64,000 bases of DNA, taken from positions 140,455 through 204,454 of the IMG/VR virus record IMGVR_UViG_3300044646_001937; one strand, 5' to 3'. The translations under genes were made by a program, and so were the position numbers. The notes beneath the pieces are model-generated. The model made no database searches. It was not told where the DNA came from and was given only the letters and a program-made list of their open reading frames with translations. Positions 44,901 to 64,000 of the stretch are shown here, piece by piece; the stretch's first letter is position 1; each line of letters opens with the position of its first letter.

Positions 44901-46788
44901 ATCTGAAGGAAATATCAAAGATCCCAATAGGACAGGAGCTGCTCCAACATACCCAGCGTCACACATGTCACCCATCGAATTGTCAGGGGCATACGACGCA
45001 TCATGGTCCGCCAGAAACACCATACAGCTAAACAAGAATATTTCAGGAGATATGGTTGGGGAAAACATTAAAAATTTAAAAATGTCTCAACCTACCCATG
45101 TAGCAATTGACGGGCAAGGTAACATATATATTTCTGATACTGGAAATAAAAAGATTAAATTACTCACCAGATCAGAAACAATTAAAGACCCCAACCTGCA
45201 CGAGAGTGATATTAAAAATTTAATTAATTATACTTCGGCAAGAACGATAAGTACTTTAGATGAGTTTCCTGGACAGCTTGAAGTTAGTGACGACGGAAAC
45301 ACCATCACCTTCCTAGCTGGCGGAAAACTATACCGCAGAATCAAGGGTGTAAATTATTTAATTACAGGTGAAAATTTAAATACCACCAATAAAACACCTG
45401 CAAAAAATTATCAATGGCCTGTGTACAGTGCCGCATGGGGTAGGTCTCTACCGGAAGACTACGGTAAAGAATTTATATCTAGCTTTATTCAGACAACTAA
45501 TGGAAGTACAATATTCTTCAGTAACGGTAGAGGCAAGGTTGTAAAAATTAATTGCATGACTAATTTAGACAAAATTGCTTATGTAGAATACTCTTTTGAC
45601 AACATAACATTTACGAAATATTCCGAAACCACAGGCATCCCAGTACCTAATGTGCAGTTAGGTACAGCTATACCTATGTATTTTAGGACTGTGTCTACGG
45701 ATAATGTACGAAGCACTACAGTACAATTAACTACAGATCCGTATTTAAAGGCAAACGAAAGTGTAGCCGTATCCTCAGTGACAGCGGCCCTGCAATTTAA
45801 AGCAACCGATTATTTTACGCATAAAGACGGGACTACACAACGCAGGGCAAGATATCTAGTTACACCACCATCAATAGTTACATCACTTTCCGAAGGGGAA
45901 AATTTTCCTAAAAATATAATAACGCTCGTGCAATCAACTAGAGTTACATCTGTAAATAATAGCGCATTTGTTATCGCCGAAGCTAAACAAAGATTAAACT
46001 ATGTACAAAAAATAATGCGGCTAAAATCTACTACAGCAGCAGATCTAGTTAAACTTAAAAAAGAAGAAGAGTTGGCTCTTAAATTAATTGCAAGCCCTTC
46101 ACTGGATGTAAGAACCTCCGATGCATGGAGATTCAGAAATGTTTCTTCTGCCCCTATATCTGGAATTTCTAAATATGATTTCCTCGAAATGGATGTAACG
46201 ATTAAATTTACGGCAAGCAGGAATACCGGTATCACCTCAATAAACCCAACGCCAATACCCTACACCGATTACATCGTAATCATCAAAAATATTACAAAGA
46301 ATAGGGTTTTTGAAATAACAGGCGACGCAACTAAATATAAATATATTAAATCAAAAGAAATAGATCCTGCGTCCGGGGTTATAACATACGTTGTCAGATT
46401 CTACAACGACACCTACGTTACCGAGAGTAATCCAAGATTTAAACATTGGAGAACACGCCCGATATTCACAGATTCAGAGCCTCCAGCGTACGAGTACCAT
46501 AGAGTGCCTAGACAATTAAAAAAATTCGGCAATTACACCAGTCCAATAAATCTAGGCCAATCTTACATTAGACCGGCAGACGCAGCGCTTGATAGAGGTT
46601 GGTATTCTAATGAGTATGTGGAGTTTTCAGGTCCTGATTTTTCTAAAGGAGACACTTTAGAAATATATATTGTTCCGGACAAAACAAAATACTCTAAGCG
46701 AGCAAGTTACACACCATATACTATAACTATGAGTGACGCAACTAACCTGCAGCTTACTGGAGCTAAAGGACAATCAGTGGTTTACTAG
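35938..46788 (+). CDS. Giant (3616 aa) beta-rich virion protein with scattered FN3-like and NHL-like elements
   Basis: Uninterrupted 10.85-kb ORF, Y/T/S/P/N-rich. FN3-like signatures (FRSVSANGAG, LRCVNEVGQG, PPDPP, PPAPAI) and an NHL-like PTHVAIDGQGNIYISDTGN. Confidence 0.8.
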   Translation: MEKTSLIEYKLKSYLGGVLAKLKYVNSPLTPLTKVEYSFDGVTWTELSSQAFSNTIIAQDPVTPYIYTIERIFVPLAEYRDYLISFRLTNTVATGAQSIPGIGRRGGPPEALVVKPTLTRLPYMNRYTNVAFSVFSTLSSTVVGKMIVTFEYDPMLDGGSGSTPITDVLISLDSRQTWLQPDTLEVFKTTKQSNVVETYVAGDTNRTFSGIGTFVRVSYTLPQGGDFTYLQDSPIYYKTINFAGESPAIKIVTKLPLVIVTSPNNPDYPILNKIESSDWYFGSNQEVRRDLQVYLELPESTGFGEPYQLQSTQLLDLAELTPVSVTPPEGQQALKNIDLTVTTVGDTFRRGERLKIYSQANPSKIWFIAQVTSNSRVNPVLSLDILEKYAVTPYSISVNSFANGADEFHKNTPLWNIHNHPINYPLLDLYVGDQLRDDDVFVSGRTLSFFRKDISFNDIYFYATIISKDINIGKLTIKITSKSDCLQNNCHNNQSFLTSWEITPIMTSADTFPTEANDWVIEPLYPVLEARYNLAEASNPNSIIEKGTAGLTIIKDDNNIPTLGYFTIRGISDIETYALNMTYGPAGAEFLSRLSPTSTIQCSLLSIAQKVTFLPIRTYTEAVYTNEFVSWWYLSKLTPLVSQTEIKFKLPLAPNDNSTIAVAYRKIVRTEIENIEGITTPSSLYEGRVVGELNFVALQSTPTTDALREITFPIDEATHLNNEGRRVEISYEISFLKIIRNLTSNNEELLTELNKLKDKIPGDIVKTTISIPGAQPIDFVLGRELLNPTAIGLTLVYNDQLPGYEYLDFKDTQAQDITLKQTDFYRSTIEYSTNQGGSWRHVLKPGIPAYDEKFSQVNTTYYQNIGADIITFTEENYNVYPAGTLLSGETIQDYTYVVEALDAFSVRISKPQKASAFSPAVKSSVLAKYTGTSTTYTRFQKGTAIMYVDKYLDYTTDLPVKIANTTLTGAANIIAQRPYMLGNVKNYNQSTGRLEIVITSITTSPVSGALDNLSSWEITHALRKKTYIDKFISILYGYTNNYFSSASNTKRPTIYVGNLAEAQAYSIWLRTSNTLYGKGPIIKLSGTTTALPSSPPTVDVKLTIAGFDIDISPGFAEKAWIQAPQAAIQGYEYAIISGNVWYDVDVTPTWNTLNNGVITGLTQNAEYMLSFRSVSANGAGPATVPKVYKTASLPLKITSLTGFMPLIGITEIVLPSEIVLSAIPYTIEYELEQGYYDKLGRYIDDPTLAGKTGILADNSLLNLYTDLTATAIFNETQINSIRTYFVKLRCVNEVGQGPWSDTFILSVLSPEIRPVKVKWSPGPSCILIDEIGLMDTELKLNLTRGTRPAEIKTLNSAVRWQYAKVVTVAPRILTDNRIYYTGNEQKYTDAGQEEPVIHLKNALAAVEWQNIVSNTIPMEDEQSVILLFRAANAAGGIEMTDVLGYDGAYSRFTYNPIEPYGFASKYFQDGPEFDTYHRTKSIYQYDTDRPNRCYGALFKKTSFSANCPLPRLAYNKYGRYIKYQEELFSPFFNLEERTIKTQPFLDFELSYVKNYEQLGGINDTVYTSPMLTCTELPCELGVSSSVQVSAATEDILAPNDFVIITDSLTGGVAHRYALAYVKSVDEIDESNKTKSGYKIFWLNEETTAAALGSGFMSPWPEGLPTSVYNVVDSSSFRLHTLSELQPKFAKDPWTITSGYLPVSNTPGIIAAFKTTSNLFSGALPFRDADGKDFWSVTLNMSMTNYFENTYVGIKVYKYNNNPNQYATNTLTLLGESRFFRSEEPDINVFAQYNAVFFIPEEGIIFDIYDEIYLEIFACIKPNTLTHPPGTLSTQHTVTIKFDSSSYLSTTIPKDFKYRDQMVTFDVLRIGRLIPSNRAFYTPSAGARSYINKYAASVGFLIQGNVNWASLRQSLEQMLPVYRPYDLFPAQSPIAIEQGLVGDSWSQGNSYELVTLVPSRYYTDPLTPSIVNGSVFKVNGNTPAEYSLFSDGKLTSVPALKIITPISTAISDKYSVSEWLHGYLENNTFKGASTRTEKVYRATYVDQFNNVTEEGYDGIPTYKYAKDDVVIHYIDVYDTQNQHSRESVLYKSKVDNNDNPIYDTDYWEPITLPGVSKVDGQHPILPVPVITYSIQPPDPPIVVDIIEEHNRIGFVIKPPYFKKYKNNSTQIDDFLSANYYDGGMAKDSPLVFRANKSIGLTNHKSPEAQGISLESMLPTLRFKYPAAGISTVQFNRNNSSTLFAFDKYIVAGDNLYINAPGQLPALSKGYTIKSISTLQNGLCVIEYYDDFATADKSSFEFNFIFGGGHSVYVTHNPINDHVLVPDTTKSRYETNTYWLNNCLEDEEYLITIRLDNGWKPKLQKIENTYTKVYRVRTKKITPPAPAIDSIQYDGSVFKLNFTYGSSPVPLYYNWQELSANDYTELSTTVRQLPFYYGISFATVNETVLAGGEATITRTRYRTGSLAPIYKDYATNYWQQLLDMRQDITFSAYRWPTDAELQDIESQYSPAVWPTGKESYLNDRADKWFSRYKIPIDAYANKSTPGSVTDVKYYTPNASYPYDEQGVMALSTQTDIYSSNPMLLSPVGIKNDPRGRAYLTAYRRYWDDENYKIPSDAISSLSSNTDTFGERPTHIPIYSPTGKTLRDDNKVCGLLYTSDEYFNKHPYYQDYADSIYLSIYRAPFRRKAANNAVNNIHADIDSSGYSYSHINFPVRATLGSSKYTNNQQITLNSNGFYSVPSISSIPNSDTTYYSSSYVDTYFGIPAAINYFLTTNIEDYIPLYRETAVVRSNLSEDLLESQRVLAVVKYDNSPYTEIISTAFPGLAFNRRKDYEASEIDVPITDNLNLFSEIAANYYTDWFANDLYVPPKKKYSNFETFSAIEQEEFHAVSDFAVLKSYNRNIPTYAVYVCQSQNICCVMSSGNLNGISKNENDNPSDTFSSLLPFEHRPYISNQTPFVEWGFRRNYFQTLDYGYSKSFLDYDRYVWPVLSEGNIKDPNRTGAAPTYPASHMSPIELSGAYDASWSARNTIQLNKNISGDMVGENIKNLKMSQPTHVAIDGQGNIYISDTGNKKIKLLTRSETIKDPNLHESDIKNLINYTSARTISTLDEFPGQLEVSDDGNTITFLAGGKLYRRIKGVNYLITGENLNTTNKTPAKNYQWPVYSAAWGRSLPEDYGKEFISSFIQTTNGSTIFFSNGRGKVVKINCMTNLDKIAYVEYSFDNITFTKYSETTGIPVPNVQLGTAIPMYFRTVSTDNVRSTTVQLTTDPYLKANESVAVSSVTAALQFKATDYFTHKDGTTQRRARYLVTPPSIVTSLSEGENFPKNIITLVQSTRVTSVNNSAFVIAEAKQRLNYVQKIMRLKSTTAADLVKLKKEEELALKLIASPSLDVRTSDAWRFRNVSSAPISGISKYDFLEMDVTIKFTASRNTGITSINPTPIPYTDYIVIIKNITKNRVFEITGDATKYKYIKSKEIDPASGVITYVVRFYNDTYVTESNPRFKHWRTRPIFTDSEPPAYEYHRVPRQLKKFGNYTSPINLGQSYIRPADAALDRGWYSNEYVEFSGPDFSKGDTLEIYIVPDKTKYSKRASYTPYTITMSDATNLQLTGAKGQSVVY

Positions 46789-54836: not shown

Positions 54837-55385
54837 ATGAAGAGTAAAAAACAAATATTGAAAGATGAGAAAGCTCCTGTTCTTGTACTTATAGCCCTGA
54901 TCGCTAAAGAATATGGCGAAGAGTGTTACCACTGGGAGCCTCTTGTTTTAAAAGCAGAATTACAGGAAGATTTTGAAGTAGAGTTGTCGGACCTGCAATC
55001 AGATAAAATACAGGCAGGTATTACAATCCTGACTACAGATCAGTACGAAACAAACGTACCTGTTTTTGAAACTCTCAACTATCTGCTAAACAATCAGCCT
55101 GACGATCTGGAAGATTTTAATCCACTAGAACCTGAAGAGCTGATTTGCGGACTGACTGAAGCATATTTGATTAGAGGTGAAAAATTAGACTTTTCTCCTG
55201 AAGTTAGAGTTTATGCTGGCCTGGTCTTCCATGAATATGGTATGCATAAGCCTCCTACATTGTTTCCAGAAGCAATCATGAAAGAGCGTGAAGGAAACGA
55301 TGACTCAAAGAACGAGGCTCTGCAGGAGCTGTTTGATGAAAAAATTAAACTTATTAAGAAATACCTAGACAATGCACAGCTATAA
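54837..55385 (+). CDS. Hypothetical acidic helical protein
   Basis: ATG 54837 lies 6 nt after TATAAT (54825-54830) and avoids overlap with the upstream ORF; ~182 aa. Confidence 0.7.
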   Translation: MKSKKQILKDEKAPVLVLIALIAKEYGEECYHWEPLVLKAELQEDFEVELSDLQSDKIQAGITILTTDQYETNVPVFETLNYLLNNQPDDLEDFNPLEPEELICGLTEAYLIRGEKLDFSPEVRVYAGLVFHEYGMHKPPTLFPEAIMKEREGNDDSKNEALQELFDEKIKLIKKYLDNAQL

Positions 55386-56484
55386 TACACTTCTTGCAAA
55401 TATTTATGAAAAGCCTAACGCTAAAAGGCTAGAGCATCTGTATAACATACTTTTTGAAACCATACCCACTACAGTAACCTTTTCTGATAACTTTGAGATA
55501 GATTCTCTGAAAGCCCTCGAAGAGCACTTTGACATCTTTACAAGTGATATAACGGTGGTAGGGTCTAGGCTTGTAGAAGAAAACGTGTGGGTAGGTAAGA
55601 AGGGTACTTATAGAGATATACTGCTACATTCTTCGTATAGATCCCCTGACGGAGATCATCCTATGCTGGGTGCAGTATACGGCAACAGTGTTAAAAAAGA
55701 AGATATCGACAGTATGCACGTAAGCGTTAGAGCTGCGTGCAAAGACAGAGAAGAGGCCAAACGGTTATGCGATCTTTTGTTGCCGTTTAAACTGCAACTT
55801 AAGAATAAGATCTACATGCTTACAGCTAGTTATGGAGAGCTCAGTTTGTCTCCGCTACCCACAATGGACGTTAATAGCAATTTAGCTCTAAACTATGGTT
55901 CAGAGTTTGAAGCTTTCCATGAAAAGATTATGGATAGCCTTAAAACAAAGACATCTGGACTGTATCTGTTCAGTGGGCCTCCAGGCACAGGCAAGTCATC
56001 CTACATCAAATATCTCACAACATGCGATATTGGACGTAAGATAGTATACATCCCAGGAGGCATGATTGAGCAGCTAGTCTCTCCCGAAATGGTTCCATTG
56101 CTAGTCGAGAACAAGAATATTATTCTAGTTATCGAGGACGCTGAAAAAGCTCTAATTTCTAGAGAGGTATCAGCAAACACAGATATGGTGCAGACTGTAC
56201 TCAACCTTACGTCAGGCTTCCTTGGAGATGCTGCCAATGTATCCATCATTGCCACATTCAATACATCTAAAGATAACATTGATTCGGCACTATTGCGTAA
56301 AGGTAGGTTAAAGCTCAGCTATGAGTTTGATAAGCTTTCGCTAGATGACACTATTAAACTGGCGGAATCTCTTGGATTAAATACCTCCGGAATTACCGAA
56401 GGCATGACTCTTGCAGATATTTATCACATGGAAGAGCAACCAGGATATGAGAAGCCTGAAGAAAAGCGCGTAGGGTTCTTCTAA
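55372..56484 (+). CDS. AAA+ ATPase (single domain, BCS1-like architecture)
   Basis: Walker A GPPGTGKS, Walker B ILVIEDAE, sensor-1 IIATFN, arginine finger ALLRKGRL. Confidence 0.9.
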   Translation: MHSYNTLLANIYEKPNAKRLEHLYNILFETIPTTVTFSDNFEIDSLKALEEHFDIFTSDITVVGSRLVEENVWVGKKGTYRDILLHSSYRSPDGDHPMLGAVYGNSVKKEDIDSMHVSVRAACKDREEAKRLCDLLLPFKLQLKNKIYMLTASYGELSLSPLPTMDVNSNLALNYGSEFEAFHEKIMDSLKTKTSGLYLFSGPPGTGKSSYIKYLTTCDIGRKIVYIPGGMIEQLVSPEMVPLLVENKNIILVIEDAEKALISREVSANTDMVQTVLNLTSGFLGDAANVSIIATFNTSKDNIDSALLRKGRLKLSYEFDKLSLDDTIKLAESLGLNTSGITEGMTLADIYHMEEQPGYEKPEEKRVGFF

Positions 56485-58202
56485 CCCTCTATTGCATCTG
56501 GTCCAGCTGAAGAGCTTGGGCCAATAAGACCTGCGTCACCTACAGCCATATAGGCGGCGCAAACAGCAAACACCAGACTGTGCAGCGCATCGTCTGGTTG
56601 CTTTGGGTGGTGATCATATATCAGCTCCTGTCCAAATAGTCCATCTCTGACCTCAATGAATACATTCAATATATCCTGCATATATTCTGAAACGTCGTTC
56701 CATTGAGGAAAAACTATTTTGCCTGCCTTAAGCTGTCTGATTACAAGAGATATTACATCAGACCTATGCAAGACCCATCTATTTTGACGCCAGTCATAAG
56801 CACCAGCGTCAAAGTACTGGATAACCTTGCTGCGTCTATAGGCAGCCATTTGCGAGCGTTGAGGGCTCGTCAGCTCACAAAGCTTAATACCCCTAAAAGG
56901 GTCAGGACCACTGTCCGCGACACAGAAAGCGTTAACAGCATTAGCTCTCCTGGCAATGTCTTTAATGTGCGCCTCATGGTCGTGTCCCCTGTATATCTTA
57001 GAAAAGAATACTTCGTACACTCCATCGCCACGCATTGCCCCAAGCGTAGCTACAGTTCTAGACTGCGCCATACTCACACCCCAGTCTACACCCATAGTAT
57101 ATAGCTTATACTTGGTTTTATTCTTACTCAAAATACTGAGTTTAGTTTCATCGTTATTTTCAAACTGAGGCCCTAGAGTACATAGCTTTACAAGCTCCTC
57201 TTGCGTAATAGGTTTTGAACCTATATCGTAAGTAAGCCCAAAAGTCTCGTTCATTACAGTTTTAAGTTCATATTTACCACTATGAACTTTCTCATAAATT
57301 TCTTTCCACTCTTTAGGGTCTTCGTTGAAATGCGGAAGAATAGGCTGTGCTAGATGATAGCCGGTAATCAGATAGTCTGATGGGTTCATGCTTACCCATT
57401 CACCTATCCTGCAATCTATTCTTTTAGAGCACTTGGAGCAGCTAAGCCCATGAGGCTGCACCATCTTAAGAGGGTCGTTACCTTCTGTAAGCGAATTCCA
57501 ATGGTTGCAAGCCTCACACTTCATCATCCACTCCAGCTGATTGGAAGTCTTCCATATTCTATGTATGGTATTAGTACTATCCAGCGGAGTGCCTGCAAAA
57601 ATTTCTCGCTTATAAGGACTCATTGCCATTGTTTCCTGAATAATCGGGATTTGATCATACTGGATATCCTGAACCTCGTCGTACACCACACAGTCTACGG
57701 CAGGTCCACGAGTTCTGGTTGCATCATCCTTAACATACCTAAACAAAACACTACTATGCGTATCGTCTAATATCTTTTCAAAAACATCATTTTTAAACCA
57801 TCCTTTGACTAATAATTCTTTGATTTTAGGACTCTCAAATCTTGGGGGCAGATAGTTACTAGAGAAATATTTGGTAGTCAGCTCCTGAGGACCAACATAC
57901 ATCATTTTAAAATAATTCCACCGGATTAGGTTAAGACATATAAAATTAGATAATAAGGTAGACTTTAGCGTTTTACGACTACACTTTAAGATTAGTTTTT
58001 GAGGCATATTGTCATAGATATGCTTCAGCATCGGGAAATCCTCCAGCTTCTGGAGTCTTCCCTCATTGTCGTAGAGGTAATTCTCTACAAAGTGAGAGGG
58101 AGGTAGTACCGAAAAAATTAACTGGCGGGCAAGAAATGTGGACTTCGCATTGTTTTTGCGAAGTAATTTCTCAATAGTGTCTTTAACTAAATGGGTCGTC
58201 AT
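56481..58202 (-). CDS. terL: Terminase large subunit (GpA-like, with Zn-binding insert)
   Basis: ATPase motifs KCSRKTLKST, RGPAVDCVVYDEVQD and AGTP; CEAC...CSKC Zn ribbon; nuclease MGVDWG, ADSG and PDDALHS. ATG 58202 is preferred over TTG 58223. Confidence 0.88.
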   Translation of the reverse strand: MTTHLVKDTIEKLLRKNNAKSTFLARQLIFSVLPPSHFVENYLYDNEGRLQKLEDFPMLKHIYDNMPQKLILKCSRKTLKSTLLSNFICLNLIRWNYFKMMYVGPQELTTKYFSSNYLPPRFESPKIKELLVKGWFKNDVFEKILDDTHSSVLFRYVKDDATRTRGPAVDCVVYDEVQDIQYDQIPIIQETMAMSPYKREIFAGTPLDSTNTIHRIWKTSNQLEWMMKCEACNHWNSLTEGNDPLKMVQPHGLSCSKCSKRIDCRIGEWVSMNPSDYLITGYHLAQPILPHFNEDPKEWKEIYEKVHSGKYELKTVMNETFGLTYDIGSKPITQEELVKLCTLGPQFENNDETKLSILSKNKTKYKLYTMGVDWGVSMAQSRTVATLGAMRGDGVYEVFFSKIYRGHDHEAHIKDIARRANAVNAFCVADSGPDPFRGIKLCELTSPQRSQMAAYRRSKVIQYFDAGAYDWRQNRWVLHRSDVISLVIRQLKAGKIVFPQWNDVSEYMQDILNVFIEVRDGLFGQELIYDHHPKQPDDALHSLVFAVCAAYMAVGDAGLIGPSSSAGPDAIEG

Positions 58203-58383
58203 AACCAAAAAACCAAACAGCAACAGAATAAAAAAAGAATAGAAAATACATCCGTTGATCTATATAACTTTTTTGATACCTCCTTTGCCACTATGATAAG
58301 TATCTTCAGTGGCAAGCCTCCTGGCAATAAAAAACATTATAGGGTCTACAAAAAATAATAACTATGCTATAATAGTTGTTATT

Positions 58384-58542
58384 ATGAGTAGAACTATCAG
58401 GAAATATCAAATAAAAGATAGGCGTAATCGTTATAAAACTAACGAGAAACTAGACCTTAAGGGTAGATATTATACGGATGTAGCCAAATCCCATGATAGA
58501 AAAATCAAAAAGAAGGGGCTACAAGAAGAAGACGAAGATTGA
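58384..58542 (+). CDS. Small, highly basic protein with acidic tail (52 aa)
   Basis: MSRTIRKYQIKDRRNRYK...EEDED; TGcTATAAT (58365-58373) 10 nt before the ATG. Confidence 0.5.
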   Translation: MSRTIRKYQIKDRRNRYKTNEKLDLKGRYYTDVAKSHDRKIKKKGLQEEDED

Positions 58543-58993
58543 TGTTGCGTCTGAACCTGTAGCCCGTAAACGGGGAAGGCCCAAAGGGGCCAAGAACAAA
58601 CCTAAGCAGCCTATAGCTCATACTGAGCCTGTAGCTGTTGAGGTTCGTAAGAGAGGCAGACCAAAGGGAGCCAAGAATAAGCCTAAGGCTATTGCTCCTG
58701 CTATGGTGATAAAGGTTAAAGCTAAACCTGCACCTGAGGAGATTAGGGTAAATAAGAAAGTTGAGCAGGTGGATGAGCATCCACTTTTTGCTGCAGTCAA
58801 ATGGCTGGAGAAGCATATGCATCCTTCCCAGTCGGCATATTACGCCAAACGAGCCGCTAGAGCGGGCGCAACGTTGCATAACGCAATGCTTGCCGACATC
58901 CTTGGATTCTTCAACGTCCAGGAAACAAACATACTTAAACAAGTAAAAAAGAATAACTTCATAGCAACATTCGCAGACAATGAACTTCATTAA
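58493..58993 (+). CDS. AT-hook DNA-binding protein
   Basis: Two identical RKRGRPKGAKNKPK motifs (58565-58606, 58646-58687) and a helical C-terminal domain. Confidence 0.72.
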   Translation: MIEKSKRRGYKKKTKIDVASEPVARKRGRPKGAKNKPKQPIAHTEPVAVEVRKRGRPKGAKNKPKAIAPAMVIKVKAKPAPEEIRVNKKVEQVDEHPLFAAVKWLEKHMHPSQSAYYAKRAARAGATLHNAMLADILGFFNVQETNILKQVKKNNFIATFADNELH

Positions 58994-60581
58994 CAAACTA
59001 GCAAAATATAGGGAAGCATCGTATCCGGCGGTATTCGTACTTACTCACGAGGAGTCCAGACTTTGTGGTGAGATTATGCATATACCTCCAGCAGATGAGA
59101 AAAGCCCTGAAGTTACAGTGCATGAGTGGGATGCTCAAAAGGGTCTTGTATATAAAAAGGGACCTAATAAAATAAAACACCCCGGCGATACTGTGGAAAG
59201 CACTACAGCGCTGGAATATATACAGAGTTTTAACGCAGCAGATAATATTTTTATACTGAAAGATTTTACTCCATTTCTGGATAGGCCATTAAACGTCCGT
59301 CTTTTAAGAAACAGCTGGAATATCCTTAAAGCTAATCGAAATATGATCGTTTTCAGTGGTCATAAATTTGCTGTGCCTGGAGAGCTTCAAAAAGAGATAC
59401 AGCTACTAGATTATACACTGCCTGATAACAAGGCTATCTCAGAGCGTCTCACATATATCTTGGATTCTGTGAATAAAGCCCGAAATGAATTGGATAAGCC
59501 GCCGCTTGATGTAGATAAAGATATCTTTGAGTCTGCTGTGGAGGCAGCCAAAGGTATGACCTATATGGAGGTCGAGAACGCCTATTCTATGGGCTGGCAG
59601 TCAGTCAAAAAGATTAACGATAAATTCGTAGATGTTGTGTTTCATGAAAAGATTGCGCAGCTTAAGAAAAATGGGCTGCTTACATACATGGAACCTAACA
59701 TCGACTTCAGTAACGTTGGCGGTTTGCATGGATTAAAAACGTGGCTAAATACACGCAAGGACGCTTATTCCGAGGAAGCTCGCCAATACAAGCTACCTCT
59801 TCCAAAGGGTATGCTTCTGGCCAGTGTTCCAGGTACTGGCAAGTCATTGATATGTAAAGCAGTTGCAAAAGAGTTTAAGTGTCCTCTGTTTGCACTAGAC
59901 CTGTCCAAGGTGTTTGACTCGCTTGTAGGTAACAGCGAGAAAAACATGGGTGAGGTAATCAAGACGATTAACGCTGTAGGTAAATGTGTAATCCTGATCG
60001 ACGAGATCGAGAAAAGCTTTAGTAACAGCGCAGTCAGCGGTTCTGGAGATAGTGGTGTCAGTAGCCGCATCTTTGGCACTTTCCTTACATGGCTAAACGA
60101 CCGTGATAACCCAGCGTTCATTGTGGCCACAACAAATAATCACACACTGCTTCCGGCTGCACTTATTCGTAAGGGCCGTTTCGATCAACTGTTCTGGCTA
60201 GATTTGCCTACAGCAGACGAGAGGAAGGAGATCTTTAATGTGGTTATTGCAAAGTATGGGCGAGATCCTAAGAACTTTGCTATCAAAACACTGGTTGCTG
60301 GCGCTGATAATTTCACAGGTGCTGAGATAGAGGAGGTATTCAAAGATGCATTATATAAAGCGTATCACGCTAAAGAAGAAGTGGCAGATACTCATGTTTT
60401 AGAGGTACTATCGGAATTTATTCCTTTCGCAGTATCCCACGAGCATGACCTGAAGACTATGCGAAAGCAGGCTCAGGGTAAACTTGTAATGGTTACAACT
60501 AAAGGTGATCCTGTAGCTGACGTACAGAAAAACATGCGCAAGTTAAGCATTGCAATTGGCGGCGAAGAAACTGAAGACTAA
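58980..60581 (+). CDS. Ycf46-like AAA+ ATPase
   Basis: 533 aa. The degenerate N-terminal AAA-like domain (YPAVFVLTHEESR...FILKDF) precedes DVGG-like NVGGLHGLKTWL, Walker A SVPGTGKS, Walker B LIDEIEK and RKGRFD. Confidence 0.85.
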   Translation: MNFINKLAKYREASYPAVFVLTHEESRLCGEIMHIPPADEKSPEVTVHEWDAQKGLVYKKGPNKIKHPGDTVESTTALEYIQSFNAADNIFILKDFTPFLDRPLNVRLLRNSWNILKANRNMIVFSGHKFAVPGELQKEIQLLDYTLPDNKAISERLTYILDSVNKARNELDKPPLDVDKDIFESAVEAAKGMTYMEVENAYSMGWQSVKKINDKFVDVVFHEKIAQLKKNGLLTYMEPNIDFSNVGGLHGLKTWLNTRKDAYSEEARQYKLPLPKGMLLASVPGTGKSLICKAVAKEFKCPLFALDLSKVFDSLVGNSEKNMGEVIKTINAVGKCVILIDEIEKSFSNSAVSGSGDSGVSSRIFGTFLTWLNDRDNPAFIVATTNNHTLLPAALIRKGRFDQLFWLDLPTADERKEIFNVVIAKYGRDPKNFAIKTLVAGADNFTGAEIEEVFKDALYKAYHAKEEVADTHVLEVLSEFIPFAVSHEHDLKTMRKQAQGKLVMVTTKGDPVADVQKNMRKLSIAIGGEETED

Positions 60582-60599
60582 CAACTAACTACTAAACAT

Positions 60600-61604
60600 A
60601 TGACAAGCGAATACAAAATTACTGAAACACTGCAGAAGTACTATGACAAGGTTTTCCAAGACGGAAAGCTAGTAAACATCCACATTGGCATGTGGGGCAT
60701 GAGTCATAACCTTGAAGAGCAAGATATTAAAATAGATTCAAAACTGCCTGAGCTTGTTAAGCTGGGCAAAAAGATGCTGATCAAGCTTCCTGTATACAAC
60801 AAGTTCAAAAACTTCGAGCAAAAGATCCGCAAGTACTTATATGTAAATTCCTTTGACTTCCCATTGGTGAGTCAAGCGCACTTTGTCCCAAAGGCAAAGT
60901 ATATCGAAGTGTATACCAAACTGAATGAACTGCGTACGGAATACATGAAGATGGTAGACGAGTTCATTGAAAAGTATGAGGATTACAAGAAAGAGGCTAT
61001 TGAGTTTTACCAGGAAAACCAAGCAACCGTAAGCATATCTGACCTAGAAAAACTCTATCCGTCAGAGGCAGCATTGCGTAAAAAGTTCTACTTTGAAATT
61101 GTATCGTTTGAGATTGCTCTTCCTGCAGAGTTTACAGAGTTGAACTTACAGAATGAGATCAACCGAGAGCTCCTTGACAATGATGCCAAGAAGCAAGCAT
61201 TGCAAAATTACAAGCAGCAGTATGATAAGCAGATTACCACGCACATGGCTAAGATTGGTGACTTTGTAAGTGATGTCACTAATACCTTGCGTAGTAAGAT
61301 TGTAGAGCATTGCTCTGTAGCTTTAACCAAGATTCAGGAGAAAAAAGTTGTGTCAGAATCAAACATCAGAACGCTGCTGAAGCATATCCAGGAGTTCAGG
61401 GATATGAATTTTGTCGACGATAAGACAATCGAGGCAGAGCTCAACAAGGTTGAAGGTCTCTTGACTGGTGGTAAAGACTTGGCGACAGACAAGGACGCTA
61501 TCAGTCTTTTGCAGCAGCATTTGACAGGTGTAGTTAAAGAAGCAGAAAACCTCACAGACGTAGCAAACGTGTCTGGCGAATACTTCAGAAAATTAAGCGT
61601 ATAA
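60600..61604 (+). CDS. DUF3150-like helical protein
   Basis: 334 aa; LGKKML...HFVPKAKYIEVYTKLNELRTEY...FIEKY pattern, and position after a Ycf46-like ATPase. Confidence 0.55.
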   Translation: MTSEYKITETLQKYYDKVFQDGKLVNIHIGMWGMSHNLEEQDIKIDSKLPELVKLGKKMLIKLPVYNKFKNFEQKIRKYLYVNSFDFPLVSQAHFVPKAKYIEVYTKLNELRTEYMKMVDEFIEKYEDYKKEAIEFYQENQATVSISDLEKLYPSEAALRKKFYFEIVSFEIALPAEFTELNLQNEINRELLDNDAKKQALQNYKQQYDKQITTHMAKIGDFVSDVTNTLRSKIVEHCSVALTKIQEKKVVSESNIRTLLKHIQEFRDMNFVDDKTIEAELNKVEGLLTGGKDLATDKDAISLLQQHLTGVVKEAENLTDVANVSGEYFRKLSV

Positions 61605-61605
61605 T

Positions 61606-61905
61606 ATGCCCTGGGATAACGACGACAATAATCTAACCGACCCTCCAAACTACGACATGTTGACTATCAGATTTAGGGGAGACAACCATGACGTAGTCTT
61701 ACCCTATTGCGAGGTAGCAAACGGCGACATCACTGAGATTGAGGATAACTTGATCAAGGTGGCAGTAAACGATAAGAAGAAAAATGTGCTGAAGCTGCCA
61801 TTTGCAGATTTCGTAAAGCTGATAGAGGAGACATTTGATATTAAAGATATCGTAAAACTAATGGTTCAAAAAGCAGGCAGTTACGACAACGTCACAGTAT
61901 TATGA
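61606..61905 (+). CDS. Hypothetical acidic protein (99 aa)
   Basis: 1-nt gap upstream; ATGA overlap downstream. Confidence 0.65.
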   Translation: MPWDNDDNNLTDPPNYDMLTIRFRGDNHDVVLPYCEVANGDITEIEDNLIKVAVNDKKKNVLKLPFADFVKLIEETFDIKDIVKLMVQKAGSYDNVTVL

Positions 61906-62291
61906 GTCACAGTGTAAACATCAAAACACAGTTCAAGAACATCACCACTCTGCTAGAGCAGTTTAAAAACAAGGGGTGGACGTTAAAAAACGATACCAAA
62001 TGCAACACATATCCCTCAGATCCTCGTAGAGATGAGATTCATAAATATGTAGCCAAAAACCCACATCCTAATGGTTATGATGTGGGTATTGGTATAGACG
62101 CAGATGGAAGCGCATATTTTGTGTGTGACTTCTTTGACAGGTCTATAGAAAGGCAGCTAGGAGAAAACCTGAAAGATATAAAACAAGGATATAGCCTGAC
62201 TGAGCTGAAAAAAGCCTTTCGCAGAGAAGACATGCGTTGTAAGGTTAGCGAACTAGCTACAGGTGAACTTGTAGTTGTTGCAGAAGCATAA
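61902..62291 (+). CDS. DUF1257 (Ycf35-like) protein
   Basis: MSHSVNIKTQFKNITTLLEQFKNKGW...DVGIG...YFVCDFF...KQGYS closely follows the DUF1257 pattern. Confidence 0.75.
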   Translation: MSHSVNIKTQFKNITTLLEQFKNKGWTLKNDTKCNTYPSDPRRDEIHKYVAKNPHPNGYDVGIGIDADGSAYFVCDFFDRSIERQLGENLKDIKQGYSLTELKKAFRREDMRCKVSELATGELVVVAEA

Positions 62292-62293
62292 TT

Positions 62294-62584
62294 ATGGAAA
62301 TTATTACAGACGAATCGTTTGACGCCATCAAAGTAAAACTGGCGCGTTCTTTGCGTGAAGAGTTGCTTAAAGATGCGCTAACCCCTAATGGTGAAAAACA
62401 TGTAGATGTTGATGTCAGAATACCTCATGAGCTGTTTATGAGAGATCCTGACAAGCCAGGTACTGTACAGGCAGCTGCCACATACACTGTAAAAATGCCT
62501 GATGAGAAAAAGCATACAGTGTATCTACAGTTCAGATATGACAAGAATGGAAACTTGGTAAAGAACTCGATCACATATGTCTAA
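62294..62584 (+). CDS. Hypothetical protein (96 aa)
   Basis: Tightly coupled ORF within the operon. Confidence 0.65.
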   Translation: MEIITDESFDAIKVKLARSLREELLKDALTPNGEKHVDVDVRIPHELFMRDPDKPGTVQAAATYTVKMPDEKKHTVYLQFRYDKNGNLVKNSITYV

Positions 62585-62777
62585 AAAAATGGTATTCAAG
62601 ATCAACAAAGACGGAAACGTGGTTGTTGATACTGTGCAAGGTTACGGTAGCGCTTGTATGGAGGCTACCAAGTTTATTGAAAGAGCGCTAGGTAAGGCCG
62701 ATGAGTCTACCAGAAAGACTACGGAAGAATATGAAAAGCCTGCCAAGCTAGATAATACGGAAAACATACAGCACTGA
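62577..62777 (+). CDS. DUF2997 family protein
   Basis: KINKDGNVVVDTVQGYGSACMEATKFIERALG matches the DUF2997 pattern (I..DG.V...V.G..G..C...T..IE..LG). Confidence 0.78.
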   Translation: MSKKMVFKINKDGNVVVDTVQGYGSACMEATKFIERALGKADESTRKTTEEYEKPAKLDNTENIQH

Positions 62778-63031
62778 TGACAGTGATCTATATAGACAAG
62801 AATGGAGACATCCAAGGACTGGCGGATGACTTCATTGACAGGCTTGATCTAGGAACAAAACAAGTAGCCAGGGTATCTGACATTGAATGGAATCACAGCA
62901 CCAATCTGTGGGAAGCTAAAGATTCTGTGACAGGCGAAATTATCGCCAGCAACAGTGTCAGGGGTAACGTAATCAATGCTGAGCGAGCTCATCTCAATAA
63001 GAAGATAGAGCATACATTTGCTCAGCGATAG
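62777..63031 (+). CDS. Small conserved-looking partner protein (84 aa)
   Basis: TGATG-coupled; IYIDKNGDIQGL...LGTKQVARVSDIEW...R...I.AE pattern, recalled from DUF2997/DUF1257 neighbourhoods. Confidence 0.65.
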   Translation: MTVIYIDKNGDIQGLADDFIDRLDLGTKQVARVSDIEWNHSTNLWEAKDSVTGEIIASNSVRGNVINAERAHLNKKIEHTFAQR

Positions 63032-63036
63032 ACAAT

Positions 63037-63069
63037 TATCACATGAGGGTCCGACCCCCTCATGTGGTA
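63037..63069. terminator. Stem-loop closing the AAA operon
   Basis: TATCACATGAGGG-tccgacc-CCCTCATGTGGTA: 13 bp with one G-U pair; weak U-tract. Confidence 0.6.
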
Positions 63070-63085
63070 TCTATATTATAATTTT

Positions 63086-63445
63086 ATGATGGAAATAATG
63101 CATTGTCAGAACATAGCACATAGAAACGCAGGAAAAATAGCTATCATCGAGCTAAGCAATCGTAATGGTACATTTATTGTACAAACACACAGCGTAAGAA
63201 AGAATCCTATGAAACATCAGAGGAAAAAGCTGTCTAGTAAAATACGCTTGAAGACTGATCATAAAGAGACCGCCATGAGTATGTTTAATGCTATTCTAGG
63301 CGAAAAACAAAAGGCAGGGTTTAAATTCCTGGCTAATGGCGAGAATATAAATATCCCTCATTTTGAGGAGCTGTTTAAACCTAAAGCTAATAAACCTAAA
63401 AAACAAAATATCGAACAACCAACCTATAGGAAACTATCTGTATGA
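63086..63445 (+). CDS. WGR-domain-like protein
   Basis: Beta-strands followed by the helix TAMSMFNAILGEKQKAGFK, like WGR C-terminal helices (EK..KGY). TATAAT at 63077-63082; the start is 63086 or 63089. Confidence 0.5.
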   Translation: MMEIMHCQNIAHRNAGKIAIIELSNRNGTFIVQTHSVRKNPMKHQRKKLSSKIRLKTDHKETAMSMFNAILGEKQKAGFKFLANGENINIPHFEELFKPKANKPKKQNIEQPTYRKLSV

Positions 63446-64000
63446 AATTTATAGCATTCAGCGATCAGCATCTAGAGAGTAAACTCTATAACATCCCTGA
63501 ACTCGAGCAGGACAACCGAGAATTGTTTAAAATGGTTATAGATAAAGCTATAGAGCTTAACGTGGATTACCTCATCAGCGTTGGTGATCTGTTTGACCAC
63601 AACAGGCCTAGCAGCGAAACAATACGCTTCGTAAGCGAAGAATTATCCAGACTCAGCGCAGATGTAACGCCTCTGGCAATAGCTGGAGATCACAGCAAGC
63701 CTATCAACGGAGCAACCTGGGAGAGCGTATGCGGATTCCACAGTGTTAATAATTTTGATAGCTTTGTGGGAGTAGACTATAGTGATAATCCTGCCGACGT
63801 AATAGCGCTAATCAATCATGAGCTGAACAAGCGAGCTAAAGACACTGTTAGGTGGATATTTATGCATCAGCAGGTTCCTGAGCTATGGCCGTTCTGTGAA
63901 GACAAGAAAAAGATCAGTATCAAAGATCTGGATCTGTCTAACCAGTGTGGAAGTATTGAGGGAATATTGCTGGGCGACATCCATATCCGCAGAGAGATGC
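63442..64000 (+). CDS. Calcineurin-like metallophosphoesterase, SbcD/Mre11/T4 gp47-type nuclease (3'-truncated)
   Basis: Not in the ORF track because it has no stop in the window. MKFIAFSDQH, VGDLFD, AGDH, FMHQ and LGDIH are the five phosphoesterase motifs; ATGA overlap with the upstream gene. Confidence 0.88.
   Translation, partial: MKFIAFSDQHLESKLYNIPELEQDNRELFKMVIDKAIELNVDYLISVGDLFDHNRPSSETIRFVSEELSRLSADVTPLAIAGDHSKPINGATWESVCGFHSVNNFDSFVGVDYSDNPADVIALINHELNKRAKDTVRWIFMHQQVPELWPFCEDKKKISIKDLDLSNQCGSIEGILLGDIHIRREM

What the first reader, a model, noticed from the sequence alone, without database searches (positions are those of the whole stretch)
58980..63031. Uncharacterised seven-gene AAA+ module: Ycf46-like ATPase, DUF3150, DUF1257, DUF2997 and partners
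Seen: a tightly coupled operon (ATGA, TGATG and short overlaps) closed by a hairpin. It encodes a two-domain ATPase, a 334-aa helical protein, and 99-, 129-, 96-, 66- and 84-aa proteins. Established from memory: ycf46 and ycf35 (DUF1257) co-occur in cyanobacteria and algal plastids, DUF2997 is a frequent neighbour, and no mechanism is known. Inference: a mobile, self-contained remodelling machine (ATPase plus adaptor and substrate subunits) used by the phage early in infection. It may act in host takeover, counter-defence or replication-complex assembly, given the adjacent WGR-like and SbcD-like genes. This is the best candidate here for an undescribed system.
Basis: partly seen in the sequence, partly recalled or inferred. 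Interest (0 to 1): 0.8.

Follow-up and report, generated by a model that had tools for sequence, protein, structure and literature searches.

The report
Phage Ycf46-type AAA+ operon with partners
A lake jumbo phage carries a real, tightly packed operon for an ATP-driven protein-remodelling motor and small partner proteins of unknown function; the same motor-plus-partners core occurs in other phages, plasmids, many bacteria and archaea, and algal plastids, so the phage copies offer a way to work out what it does.

Summary
Seven co-oriented ORFs (533, 334, 99, 129, 96, 66 and 84 aa) sit at 58980-63031 with ATGA/TGATG-type junctions and end at a 13-bp hairpin. Two upstream ORFs, one an AT-hook protein overlapping the ATPase start, probably belong to the same operon.

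The named families hold: a classical AAA+ ATPase with an inactive AAA-like N-domain, DUF3150, DUF2997, and a divergent DUF1257/Ycf35 seen only by profile and fold comparison. The 84-aa protein G is a fifth conserved family with no name.

The core trio of ATPase + DUF1257 + DUF2997 recurs, with shuffled gene order, in unrelated phages, plasmids and cellular genomes. In 80 bacterial and archaeal loci DUF2997 was present in 49, DUF1257 in 41, a small radical-SAM protein in 41 and a helix-hairpin-helix protein in 24. DUF3150 + G is a separate add-on seen on mobile elements; DUF3150 also pairs with MoxR-VWA systems.

No component has a solved-structure relative or a published mechanism. My best reading is a Cdc48-like remodelling machine aimed at DNA-associated protein targets (confidence about 0.35). 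Timing ("early") and counter-defence are unsupported; the module behaves like a core phage gene. It is an uncharacterised variant of a known kind. Interest is moderate to high.

The parts
58345..58373 (+). Promoter-like site (TCTACA-17-TATAAT with an extended -10 TG), just upstream of the first conserved small ORF
   Evidence: This is a consensus match only, and promoter-like sites are not enriched in the region. Weak evidence.
58384..58542 (+). s52: conserved 52-aa basic protein, the likely first gene of the operon (lineage-specific)
   Evidence: Homologues in 37 related loci and none in independent modules. No PHROG hit.
58493..58993 (+). g166: 166-aa protein with two AT-hook-like RGRPKGAKNKPK repeats; its stop overlaps the ATPase start by 14 nt (lineage-specific)
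   Evidence: No Pfam or PHROG hit. The AT-hook reading comes from the RGRP motif seen directly in the sequence.
58980..60581 (+). A: Ycf46-type ATPase of 533 aa, made of a degenerate AAA-like N-domain (about 1-232) and an active classical-clade AAA+ domain (about 262-470) with lid
   Evidence: PF00004 1.7e-27; phrog_8638 5e-115; Cdc48/VAT D2 about 1e-40. Walker A G285/K288, pore-loop G317/E320, Walker B D341/E342, sensor-1 N386 and Arg fingers R397/R400 are invariant in 11 distant homologues. N- versus C-domain hhalign 88%. 33% identity over residues 1-496 to a cyanobacterial plasmid homologue flanked by DUF1257 and DUF2997.
60600..61604 (+). B: DUF3150 protein of 334 aa, with an alpha+beta N-terminal half and long helical hairpins
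   Evidence: PF11348 42.2 bits against a cut-off of 24.9. Model pLDDT 88.9, pTM 0.83. Best fold matches are DUF3150 models (E 4e-13, TM about 0.6). No PDB relative. 1,604 clusters at 50% identity in the exhaustive search.
61606..61905 (+). C: 99-aa protein, lineage-specific, function unknown
   Evidence: No family hit. Found in 33 related loci and in no independent module.
61902..62291 (+). D: divergent DUF1257 / Ycf35-type protein of 129 aa with the N-terminal MSH motif
   Evidence: hhalign 96.9%, E 1.4e-10. Model pLDDT 84. AFDB matches DUF1257 at TM 0.74 and ycf35 at TM 0.65. MSH hallmark. Pfam HMM negative.
62294..62584 (+). E: 96-aa protein, shared with a second jumbo-phage lineage, function unknown
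   Evidence: Found in 26 related loci. The homologue in L151 sits between DUF1257 and DUF2997 (E 3.4e-22).
62577..62777 (+). F: DUF2997 protein of 66 aa: a beta-hairpin plus helix with invariant G13, G24, C27, T31 and L38, followed by a polar C-terminal tail
   Evidence: PF11211 37.6 bits against a cut-off of 24.1. Alignment of 10 distant members. Atlas clusters are 92-96% DUF2997.
62777..63031 (+). G: 84-aa member of a conserved family with no name (invariant G10, R32, W45, E69); a partner of DUF2997 and/or DUF3150 in other modules
   Evidence: Homologues in six independent modules (6e-15 to 8e-3). Alignment. No Pfam family. At least 1,025 clusters, all called 'hypothetical'. Adjacent to DUF3150-like genes in L047, L152 and L153.
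63037..63069 (+). Intrinsic-terminator-like hairpin that closes the operon

Best explanation
The operon encodes an ATP-driven protein-remodelling machine built on an ancient three-protein core. That core is (1) a Ycf46-type ATPase with an inactive AAA-like N-module and a catalytically complete classical-clade AAA+ module, expected to form a hexameric ring that grips and threads polypeptide through its pore loops; (2) a DUF1257/Ycf35-type protein; and (3) a DUF2997 protein. I infer that DUF1257 and DUF2997 are dedicated cofactors of the ring, acting as adaptor/regulator or as a primed substrate. In this phage the core is extended by a sub-module typical of mobile elements, DUF3150 plus the unnamed G family. 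It is further extended by lineage-specific proteins (C, E, the small basic s52 and an AT-hook protein). I infer that these direct the motor to a DNA-associated protein target during the replication, recombination or packaging phase of infection. Shown here: the operon structure, the family memberships, the intact catalytic and pore-loop motifs, and the recurrent gene linkage. Inferred: hexamer formation, physical interactions, the nature of the target and the timing.
For: (1) All catalytic and translocation motifs are intact and invariant across 11 homologues at 26-44% identity. The closest solved relatives are the unfoldases/segregases Cdc48, VAT and AFG2. (2) ATPase + DUF1257 + DUF2997 are linked in Aeromonas, Pseudomonas and Agrobacterium phages; in a Rhizobium phage-plasmid and in Manganitrophus, Thermovibrio, Pseudanabaena and B. 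cereus plasmids; in metagenomic elements with different gene orders; and in 80 cellular loci from many phyla (DUF2997 in 49, DUF1257 in 41). (3) Chaperone context: on a Pseudanabaena plasmid the trio is embedded in a GrpE-Hsp70 operon. (4) DNA context: an AT-hook protein is translationally coupled to the ATPase here; a ComEA-like HHH_3 protein sits directly upstream of the ATPase in 24 of 80 cellular loci; neighbours include SbcCD, DnaB/polymerase, ParB-like nuclease, Ku and RNase H. (5) Core-gene behaviour: the module is present in every sufficiently long related contig next to TerL and in a second jumbo-phage lineage. The ATPase gene is split by HNH and LAGLIDADG homing-endonuclease ORFs in several relatives. 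(6) DUF3150 partners a second AAA+ type (MoxR-DUF3150-VWA in 4 of 4 proteobacterial plasmids), which fits a client- or target-side role rather than a role as part of the motor. (7) Short metatranscriptome contigs at 98-99.6% identity cover g166, the ATPase and the B/C junction.
Against: There is no direct evidence of any interaction, oligomer, substrate or phenotype. Pore-loop 1 in this phage has Leu rather than an aromatic residue before V-G; homologues have Y, W or F. The DNA link is circumstantial, resting on neighbouring genes and short motifs. The frequent radical-SAM partner in cellular versions (41 of 80) is unexplained by a plain unfoldase model and is absent from this phage. The folds of DUF1257, DUF2997 and DUF3150 give no functional hint. 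The RNA evidence may be DNA carry-over. The 80 cellular loci are biased towards relatives of one plasmid ATPase.
Confidence: 0.35

Rival explanations
1. Radical or iron-sulfur-linked system. The trio's ancestral job is tied to a small radical-SAM activase-like enzyme and ferredoxin. For example, the ATPase may present, unfold or recycle a small protein (DUF2997, with its single invariant Cys) that the radical-SAM enzyme modifies or activates. The phage version would then use a host enzyme or have replaced that step with DUF3150/G.
For: A Fer4_12/Radical_SAM protein of about 200 aa lies within a few kb of the ATPase in 41 of 80 cellular loci, and all four of DUF1257, DUF2997, rSAM and HhH occur together in 19. 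It is also present in B. cereus, Treponema and Arthrobacter plasmids and in a distant jumbo phage. The cyanobacterial cluster DUF2997-ycf35-fed7 is published (PMC4284462). DUF2997 has one invariant Cys.
Against: This phage genome has no detectable homologue of the radical-SAM protein. Neither do the other phage or plasmid modules of the DUF3150/G flavour. The 'G-aromatic' motif I considered as a possible glycyl-radical site is not invariant. No chemistry is known.
Confidence: 0.2
2. Counter-defence or host-takeover device. The motor unfolds or extracts host defence or nucleoid proteins early in infection or on plasmid entry.
For: The module is carried by phages and by conjugative or mega-plasmids, sometimes beside RadC-JAB, Fic, methyltransferase and TA genes. 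The fast-evolving lineage-specific members C, E and g166 (25-55% identity where TerL is 73-92%) could be host-facing.
Against: The module is conserved as a syntenic core block in every related phage, and the trio is conserved in chromosomes of free-living bacteria, archaea and plastids. That is atypical for anti-defence genes. No similarity to known anti-defence proteins was found, and no timing data exist.
Confidence: 0.15
3. Defence or superinfection-exclusion system of mobile elements, analogous to the AAA-plus-effector pair IetAS.
For: The ATPase hits PADLOC IetA models (1.5e-24). Some cellular homologues sit near WYL, TnpB, CRISPR-Cas or TA genes.
Against: The IetA and NCBIfam IteA hits cover only the generic AAA domain and are far below cut-off (71.9 against 510 bits). 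There is no IetS-like protease or any recognisable effector or toxin domain. None of the partner proteins hits PADLOC. The module's core status in lytic-looking jumbo phages argues against this.
Confidence: 0.1
4. Virion morphogenesis or packaging accessory: a chaperone for head, tail or terminase assembly.
For: The operon is divergently adjacent to the large terminase gene in two jumbo-phage lineages. It lies close to lysis or tail genes in JP1, Pa BHU-15 and the Rhizobium phage-plasmid.
Against: The same trio occurs on non-phage plasmids, in chromosomes and in plastids that build no virions. In the phages it borders replication and repair genes at least as often as structural ones.
Confidence: 0.1

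Closest known systems
Cyanobacterial/plastid Ycf46 (slr0374) with Ycf35 (DUF1257) and DUF2997
   Same: The same three families are linked. The phage ATPase is 33% identical over residues 1-496 to a cyanobacterial plasmid homologue flanked by DUF1257 and DUF2997. D carries the Ycf35 hallmark MSH N-terminus and the same fold.
   Different: The phage operon adds DUF3150, G, C, E, s52 and an AT-hook protein, and has no ferredoxin. D is too divergent for the Pfam model. The cellular operon is a stress regulon linked to CO2 use (PMC7496141); the phage role is unknown. I did not make a direct comparison with chromosomal Ycf46.
Cdc48/p97/VAT and related classical-clade AAA+ unfoldases with cofactor proteins
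   Same: Best solved-structure matches (about 1e-40). Walker A/B, pore loops, sensor 1 and double Arg finger are all present. It has a tandem AAA-like architecture with one inactive module and small dedicated partner proteins.
   Different: Scores are far below the family cut-offs (CDC48 96.7 against 802 bits). There is no double-psi-barrel N-domain. The N-module lacks a P-loop altogether. The partners are unrelated to UBX or Ufd1-Npl4-type cofactors.
MoxR-VWA systems of conjugative plasmids carrying a DUF3150 gene
   Same: DUF3150 is the shared component: a [MoxR-type ATPase]-[DUF3150]-[VWA] array in Simplicispira, Cupriavidus, Burkholderia and Rhodovastum plasmids.
   Different: That is a different AAA+ clade. 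There is no VWA protein in the phage operon, and no DUF1257 or DUF2997 in those arrays.
Cellular [HhH]-[Ycf46-type AAA]-[DUF1257-like]-[DUF2997]-[radical SAM] loci (apparently undescribed)
   Same: The same core trio, with ATPases that align over their full length.
   Different: The accessories differ: a ComEA-like HHH_3 protein and a Fer4_12 radical-SAM enzyme take the place of DUF3150/G. The DUF1257-like protein there starts with a hydrophobic, TM-like segment rather than MSH.
IetAS anti-phage system
   Same: An AAA ATPase of the same broad clade (PADLOC IetA 1.5e-24).
   Different: Only the generic AAA domain matches. There is no IetS protease partner, and the NCBIfam IteA score is far below cut-off.

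Membership tests
Classical-clade AAA+ ATPase (PF00004) | Walker A GxxGxGK[ST] and Walker B hhhhDE | tested here: met
   G285/K288 and D341/E342 are invariant in 11 homologues. PF00004 96.9 bits against a cut-off of 21.2.
Classical-clade AAA+ ATPase (PF00004) | Second region of homology with sensor-1 Asn and two arginine fingers; pore-loop-1 phi-V-G | tested here: met
   N386, R397, R400 and G317 are invariant. The phi position is L here and Y, W, F, I or K in homologues.
Ycf46 family | Protein of about 500 aa with a specific N-terminal domain plus one active AAA domain, similar over its full length to cyanobacterial members | tested here: inconclusive
   Full-length 33% identity (E 1e-86) to a Pseudanabaena plasmid homologue and 30% to the Manganitrophus one. 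Chromosomal or plastid Ycf46 itself was not available for comparison.
Ycf46 family | Genomic linkage with ycf35 (DUF1257) and DUF2997 | tested here: met
   Both lie in the same operon. The linkage recurs widely.
DUF1257 / Ycf35 (PF06868) | Match to the Pfam model above its gathering score | tested here: not met
   No hit at E <= 0.1 for the protein or at E <= 10 in the whole genome. None of 105 close relatives carries the Pfam label.
DUF1257 / Ycf35 (PF06868) | Profile-profile homology and shared fold with bona fide members | tested here: met
   hhalign 96.9%, E 1.4e-10, 122 columns, and 99.3% against an independent DUF1257 cluster. Foldseek TM 0.74 and 0.65 to DUF1257 and ycf35 models.
DUF1257 / Ycf35 (PF06868) | Invariant N-terminal Met-Ser-His motif | tested here: met
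   D starts MSHSV. M1, S2 and H3 are invariant in 22 sequences. The motif is described as typical of essentially all Ycf35 proteins (PMC13060386).
DUF2997 (PF11211) | Pfam match above cut-off, plus the conserved G...G..C...T...L signature | tested here: met
   37.6 bits against 24.1. Invariant G13, G24, C27, T31 and L38.
DUF3150 (PF11348) | Pfam match above cut-off and shared fold | tested here: met
   42.2 bits against 24.9. Foldseek E 4e-13 to DUF3150 models.
IetAS defence system | IetA-type ATPase above the curated cut-off, together with an IetS protease partner | tested here: not met
   NCBIfam IteA 71.9 bits against a cut-off of 510. No protease or any other PADLOC hit among the partners.
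MoxR-DUF3150-VWA triad | MoxR (AAA_5) ATPase and VWA protein flanking DUF3150 | tested here: not met
   None of the operon proteins hits AAA_5 or VWA. The triad is seen only in proteobacterial plasmids.
HhH / radical-SAM flavour of the trio | Fer4_12 radical-SAM protein and HHH_3 protein next to the ATPase | tested here: not met
   The whole 204-kb phage genome has no hit to my radical-SAM HMM. The HhH cluster is unrelated to DUF3150 (hhalign below 1%).
Cdc48 / FtsH / PAN | Score above the NCBIfam family cut-offs | tested here: not met
   96.7 against 802, 92 against 600 and 86.7 against 500 bits; only the AAA domain aligns.

The most novel reading that the evidence does not exclude
ATPase + DUF1257 + DUF2997 is the core of an undescribed system found across prokaryotes. 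Its cellular form works with a small radical-SAM enzyme, a DNA-binding HhH protein and a membrane-anchored DUF1257. Its mobile-element form has swapped these for DUF3150 + G. Solving the phage or plasmid version would reveal a new AAA+-driven biochemical process and, at the same time, the long-unknown function of the plastid genes ycf46 and ycf35.
Probability: 0.35. Interest if true: 0.85.

Novelty: new variant of a known kind. Interest (0 to 1): 0.62.

Why it matters
Ycf46 and Ycf35 have been conserved 'hypothetical chloroplast frames' for decades, and papers in 2020 and 2026 still called them uncharacterised. This analysis shows that the same three-protein core is carried, as a conserved core block, by jumbo phages and by cultivable Aeromonas, Pseudomonas, Agrobacterium and probably Mycobacterium phages, and by plasmids. 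That opens the problem to simple phage and plasmid genetics. The analysis also defines two accessory sets not found under these names in the searchable literature: HhH + radical SAM, and DUF3150 + the unnamed G family. If the motor targets DNA-bound proteins, it would be a prokaryotic and viral counterpart of Cdc48-type segregases. If it is tied to radical-SAM chemistry, it would be a new kind of AAA+ system.

Tried and rejected
1. PADLOC and NCBIfam gave only generic AAA hits for the ATPase and nothing for the partners.
2. PHROGs assigned unknown-function families only.
3. Nucleotide search of cultured phages found no match.
4. Sequence search of the PDB with DUF1257, DUF3150 and DUF2997 profiles found nothing credible.
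5. Foldseek against the PDB found no match at E <= 0.001 for either model. The wide VIA search gave Z <= 5.8 to KA1/TBP-like domains, below the tool's own noise level of Z 7-8, so I draw no functional inference from it.
6. The Atlas confirmed DUF2997 and found only unnamed clusters for G; it holds no structures for either.
7. Three attempts to seed the cellular-genome scan with DUF3150, DUF2997 or ATPase-loop alignments failed because no stretch was conserved enough. The scan that worked is biased to relatives of a B. cereus plasmid ATPase.
8. The genome search could not be centred on bacterial loci.
9. The HhH protein's N-terminal part is not related to DUF3150 (below 1%).
10. The mid-size proteins that follow the ATPase in JP1, HJ05, Smooch and Pa BHU-15 do not match DUF3150.
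11. DUF2997 and G share only a 15-residue N-terminal hairpin (65%), which is not enough to call homology.
12. I rejected a glycyl-radical reading of DUF2997 because the G-aromatic position varies.
13. The Mycobacterium Corndog-like module shows the ATPase but no detectable DUF1257 or DUF2997 with my HMMs.
14. Literature searches for the DUF names, ycf35/slr037x and AAA + radical SAM + HhH found no mechanistic work.

Full report
**Context.** The window is the last 64 kb of a 204,454-bp IMG/VR virus record rated 100% complete. Its 127-bp 'terminal repeat' is an exact end overlap, typical of a circular assembly. Near-identical DNA occurs in many lake and freshwater metagenomes. The large terminase gene (56484-58223, minus strand; phrog_675, 9.5e-45) lies divergently just upstream of the finding.

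**Observation.** All seven ORFs exist at the stated coordinates and sizes.
- ATGA at C/D
- TGATG at F/G
- an 8-nt overlap at E/F
- gaps of 1, 2 and 18 nt at the other junctions

A 13-bp G+C-rich hairpin with a T-rich tail follows at 63037-63069.

A 166-aa ORF (58493-58993) with two RGRPKGAKNKPK AT-hook-like repeats overlaps the ATPase start codon by 14 nt. Ahead of it lies a 52-aa basic ORF (58384-58542). Both are conserved in 37-38 related contigs.

**Families.**
- *Pfam hits above cut-off*: AAA (1.7e-27), DUF3150 (7.9e-11) and DUF2997 (2.1e-9).
- *ATPase motifs*: Walker A, pore-loop Gly, Walker B, sensor 1 and both Arg fingers are invariant across 11 homologues at 26-44% identity. The best solved relatives are the D2 domains of Cdc48, VAT and AFG2.
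- *ATPase N-domain*: the first 230 or so residues align to the protein's own AAA domain (hhalign 88%, E 2.9e-6, 147 columns) but have no P-loop. The protein is therefore a pseudo-AAA plus AAA tandem.
- *The 129-aa protein (D)*: the Pfam DUF1257 model misses it, and no close relative carries the label. It is nevertheless DUF1257 by three other lines. Profile-profile comparison gives 96.9%, E 1.4e-10. A confident model (pLDDT 84) matches DUF1257 and ycf35 predictions at TM 0.74 and 0.65. It also starts with the MSH motif reported for essentially all Ycf35 proteins (PMC13060386).
- *DUF3150 (B)*: the model is confident (pLDDT 88.9) but matches only other DUF3150 predictions.
- *Solved structures*: none of the DUFs has a solved relative.

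**A fifth family.** An HMM built from relatives of the 84-aa protein G finds homologues in six independent modules, usually right after DUF2997: two metagenomic elements, a Rhizobium phage-plasmid, Pseudomonas and Aeromonas phages, and weakly the Manganitrophus plasmid. The family has invariant G10, R32, W45 and E69. It has no Pfam model and at least 1,025 clusters, all named 'hypothetical'. In some bacteria a G-like gene directly follows a DUF3150-like gene with no ATPase nearby. DUF3150 + G is therefore a sub-module in its own right. Protein E recurs in a second jumbo-phage lineage (L151), which has the ATPase, DUF1257, E, DUF2997 and G but no DUF3150. C, s52 and g166 are lineage-specific.

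**Co-occurrence in mobile elements.**
- *Within the phage family*: the whole block is syntenic in about 40 contigs. That alone could be shared ancestry.
- *Unrelated phages*: the ATPase (about 30% identity) is followed by DUF1257 and DUF2997 in Aeromonas phage HJ05, Pseudomonas phage Pa BHU-15 and Agrobacterium phage JP1.
- *Manganitrophus*: a 199-kb Candidatus Manganitrophus plasmid has AAA, DUF1257, DUF2997, DUF3150 and a G-like gene in a row.
- *Metagenomic elements*: these show DUF3150-AAA-DUF1257-DUF2997 and other permutations.
- *Other plasmids*: Thermovibrio, B. cereus, Arthrobacter, Pseudanabaena and Rhizobium plasmids carry variants.

**Co-occurrence in cellular genomes.** A scan of one genome per species returned more than 596 relatives of the ATPase. 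The best 80 come from Bacillota, Actinomycetota, Melainabacteria, methanogens, Hodarchaeota, Planctomycetota, Myxococcota and others. Scored with my own HMMs and by unsupervised clustering, they gave:
- DUF2997 in 49 loci
- DUF1257-like in 41 loci (including a subtype with a hydrophobic N-terminus)
- a Fer4_12/Radical_SAM protein of about 200 aa in 41 loci
- a ComEA-like HHH_3 protein in 24 loci
- all four partners together in 19 loci
- none of them in 25 loci

. DUF3150 and G were absent from this sample. The sample is biased to one ATPase subfamily.

**DUF3150 elsewhere.** The exhaustive profile search found 1,604 clusters. The sampled close relatives with enough flanking DNA sit next to a Ycf46-type ATPase. 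More distant ones, in four of four proteobacterial plasmids, are sandwiched between a MoxR-type ATPase and a VWA protein. DUF3150 thus partners two different AAA+ systems, which suggests a client- or target-side role.

**Core-gene behaviour.** In several relatives the ATPase gene is interrupted by free-standing HNH or LAGLIDADG homing-endonuclease ORFs at two different sites. This pattern is usual for conserved, important phage genes.

**Expression.** One freshwater metatranscriptome contains three short contigs at 98-99.6% identity. They cover g166, the ATPase 5' end and the B/C junction. The tool warns that DNA carry-over is not excluded.

**Interpretation.** What is shown: a real operon; a catalytically complete classical AAA+ motor with an inactive AAA-like N-module; and a robust, ancient linkage to DUF1257 and DUF2997, with interchangeable accessory sets.

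What is inferred: the motor forms a ring that remodels a protein target; DUF1257 and DUF2997 are its cofactors; and DUF3150/G, the AT-hook protein and the lineage-specific proteins aim it at a DNA-associated target during replication, recombination or packaging. The chaperone context (GrpE-Hsp70) and the DNA-related neighbours support this only indirectly.

The strong radical-SAM and ferredoxin association of the cellular versions is the main unexplained fact and underlies the chief rival. Counter-defence, defence and morphogenesis roles are less likely for the reasons given under each rival.

The literature available here gives no mechanism for any of these proteins.

**Verdict.** The system is an uncharacterised variant of AAA+-plus-cofactor machines, with partners of unknown fold class.

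Noticed in passing
L030:9253-9789, L032:9257-9793 and 10552-11412, L034:6949-7797 (relatives of window 58980-60581): In several related phages the ATPase gene is split into two ORFs by free-standing HNH (179 aa) or LAGLIDADG (283-287 aa) homing-endonuclease genes, at two different sites. One locus carries both. I did not determine whether these are group I introns or true gene splits.
   Followed up: partly
window 55372-56484 (+): A second, unrelated AAA ATPase (370 aa; PF00004 6e-12; phrog_14322) lies just upstream of the terminase gene and is conserved in 33 related contigs.
   Followed up: partly
window 35938-46788 (+): A single giant ORF of 3,616 aa. I did not analyse it.
   Followed up: no
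L065-L144 (cellular genomes): A recurrent and apparently undescribed five-gene locus in many bacterial and archaeal phyla: HHH_3 protein, Ycf46-type AAA, DUF1257-like protein with a hydrophobic TM-like N-terminus, DUF2997, and a Fer4_12/Radical_SAM protein of about 200 aa.
   Followed up: partly
L059, L148, L149, L150 (proteobacterial plasmids): DUF3150-like genes are sandwiched between a MoxR-type ATPase and a VWA protein, next to T4SS, toprim or ParB genes. This is a second conserved context for DUF3150.
   Followed up: partly
L061:1556-7500 (Pseudanabaena galeata plasmid): The trio is embedded in one co-oriented array with GrpE and an Hsp70-family protein, plus a further 355-aa ATP-binding protein.
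   Followed up: no
L152:4884-6252 and L153:682-1886: A DUF3150-like gene is directly followed by a G-family gene, with no Ycf46-type ATPase within 6 kb. In L152 this pair sits beside a type I-C CRISPR-Cas locus.
   Followed up: partly
window 63062-63445 (+): The first ATG of the next ORF (127 aa) lies inside the terminator hairpin, so its true start is probably a downstream ATG. The ORF is conserved in 29 related loci.
   Followed up: no
L049:9373-10515 (-): An IS605-type TnpB (OrfB_IS605) gene is inserted between DUF2997 and the G-family gene of one metagenomic module.
   Followed up: no
L044 (Mycobacterium phage Smooch, Corndogvirus): The ATPase homologue is followed by small ORFs in which my HMMs and Pfam detect neither DUF1257 nor DUF2997. 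Either they are very divergent or this lineage has different partners.
   Followed up: partly
window 63874-64000 and genome start: The 127-bp 'direct terminal repeat' is an exact end overlap of assembler k-mer size. It indicates a circularly closed assembly and not necessarily physical terminal repeats.
   Followed up: partly
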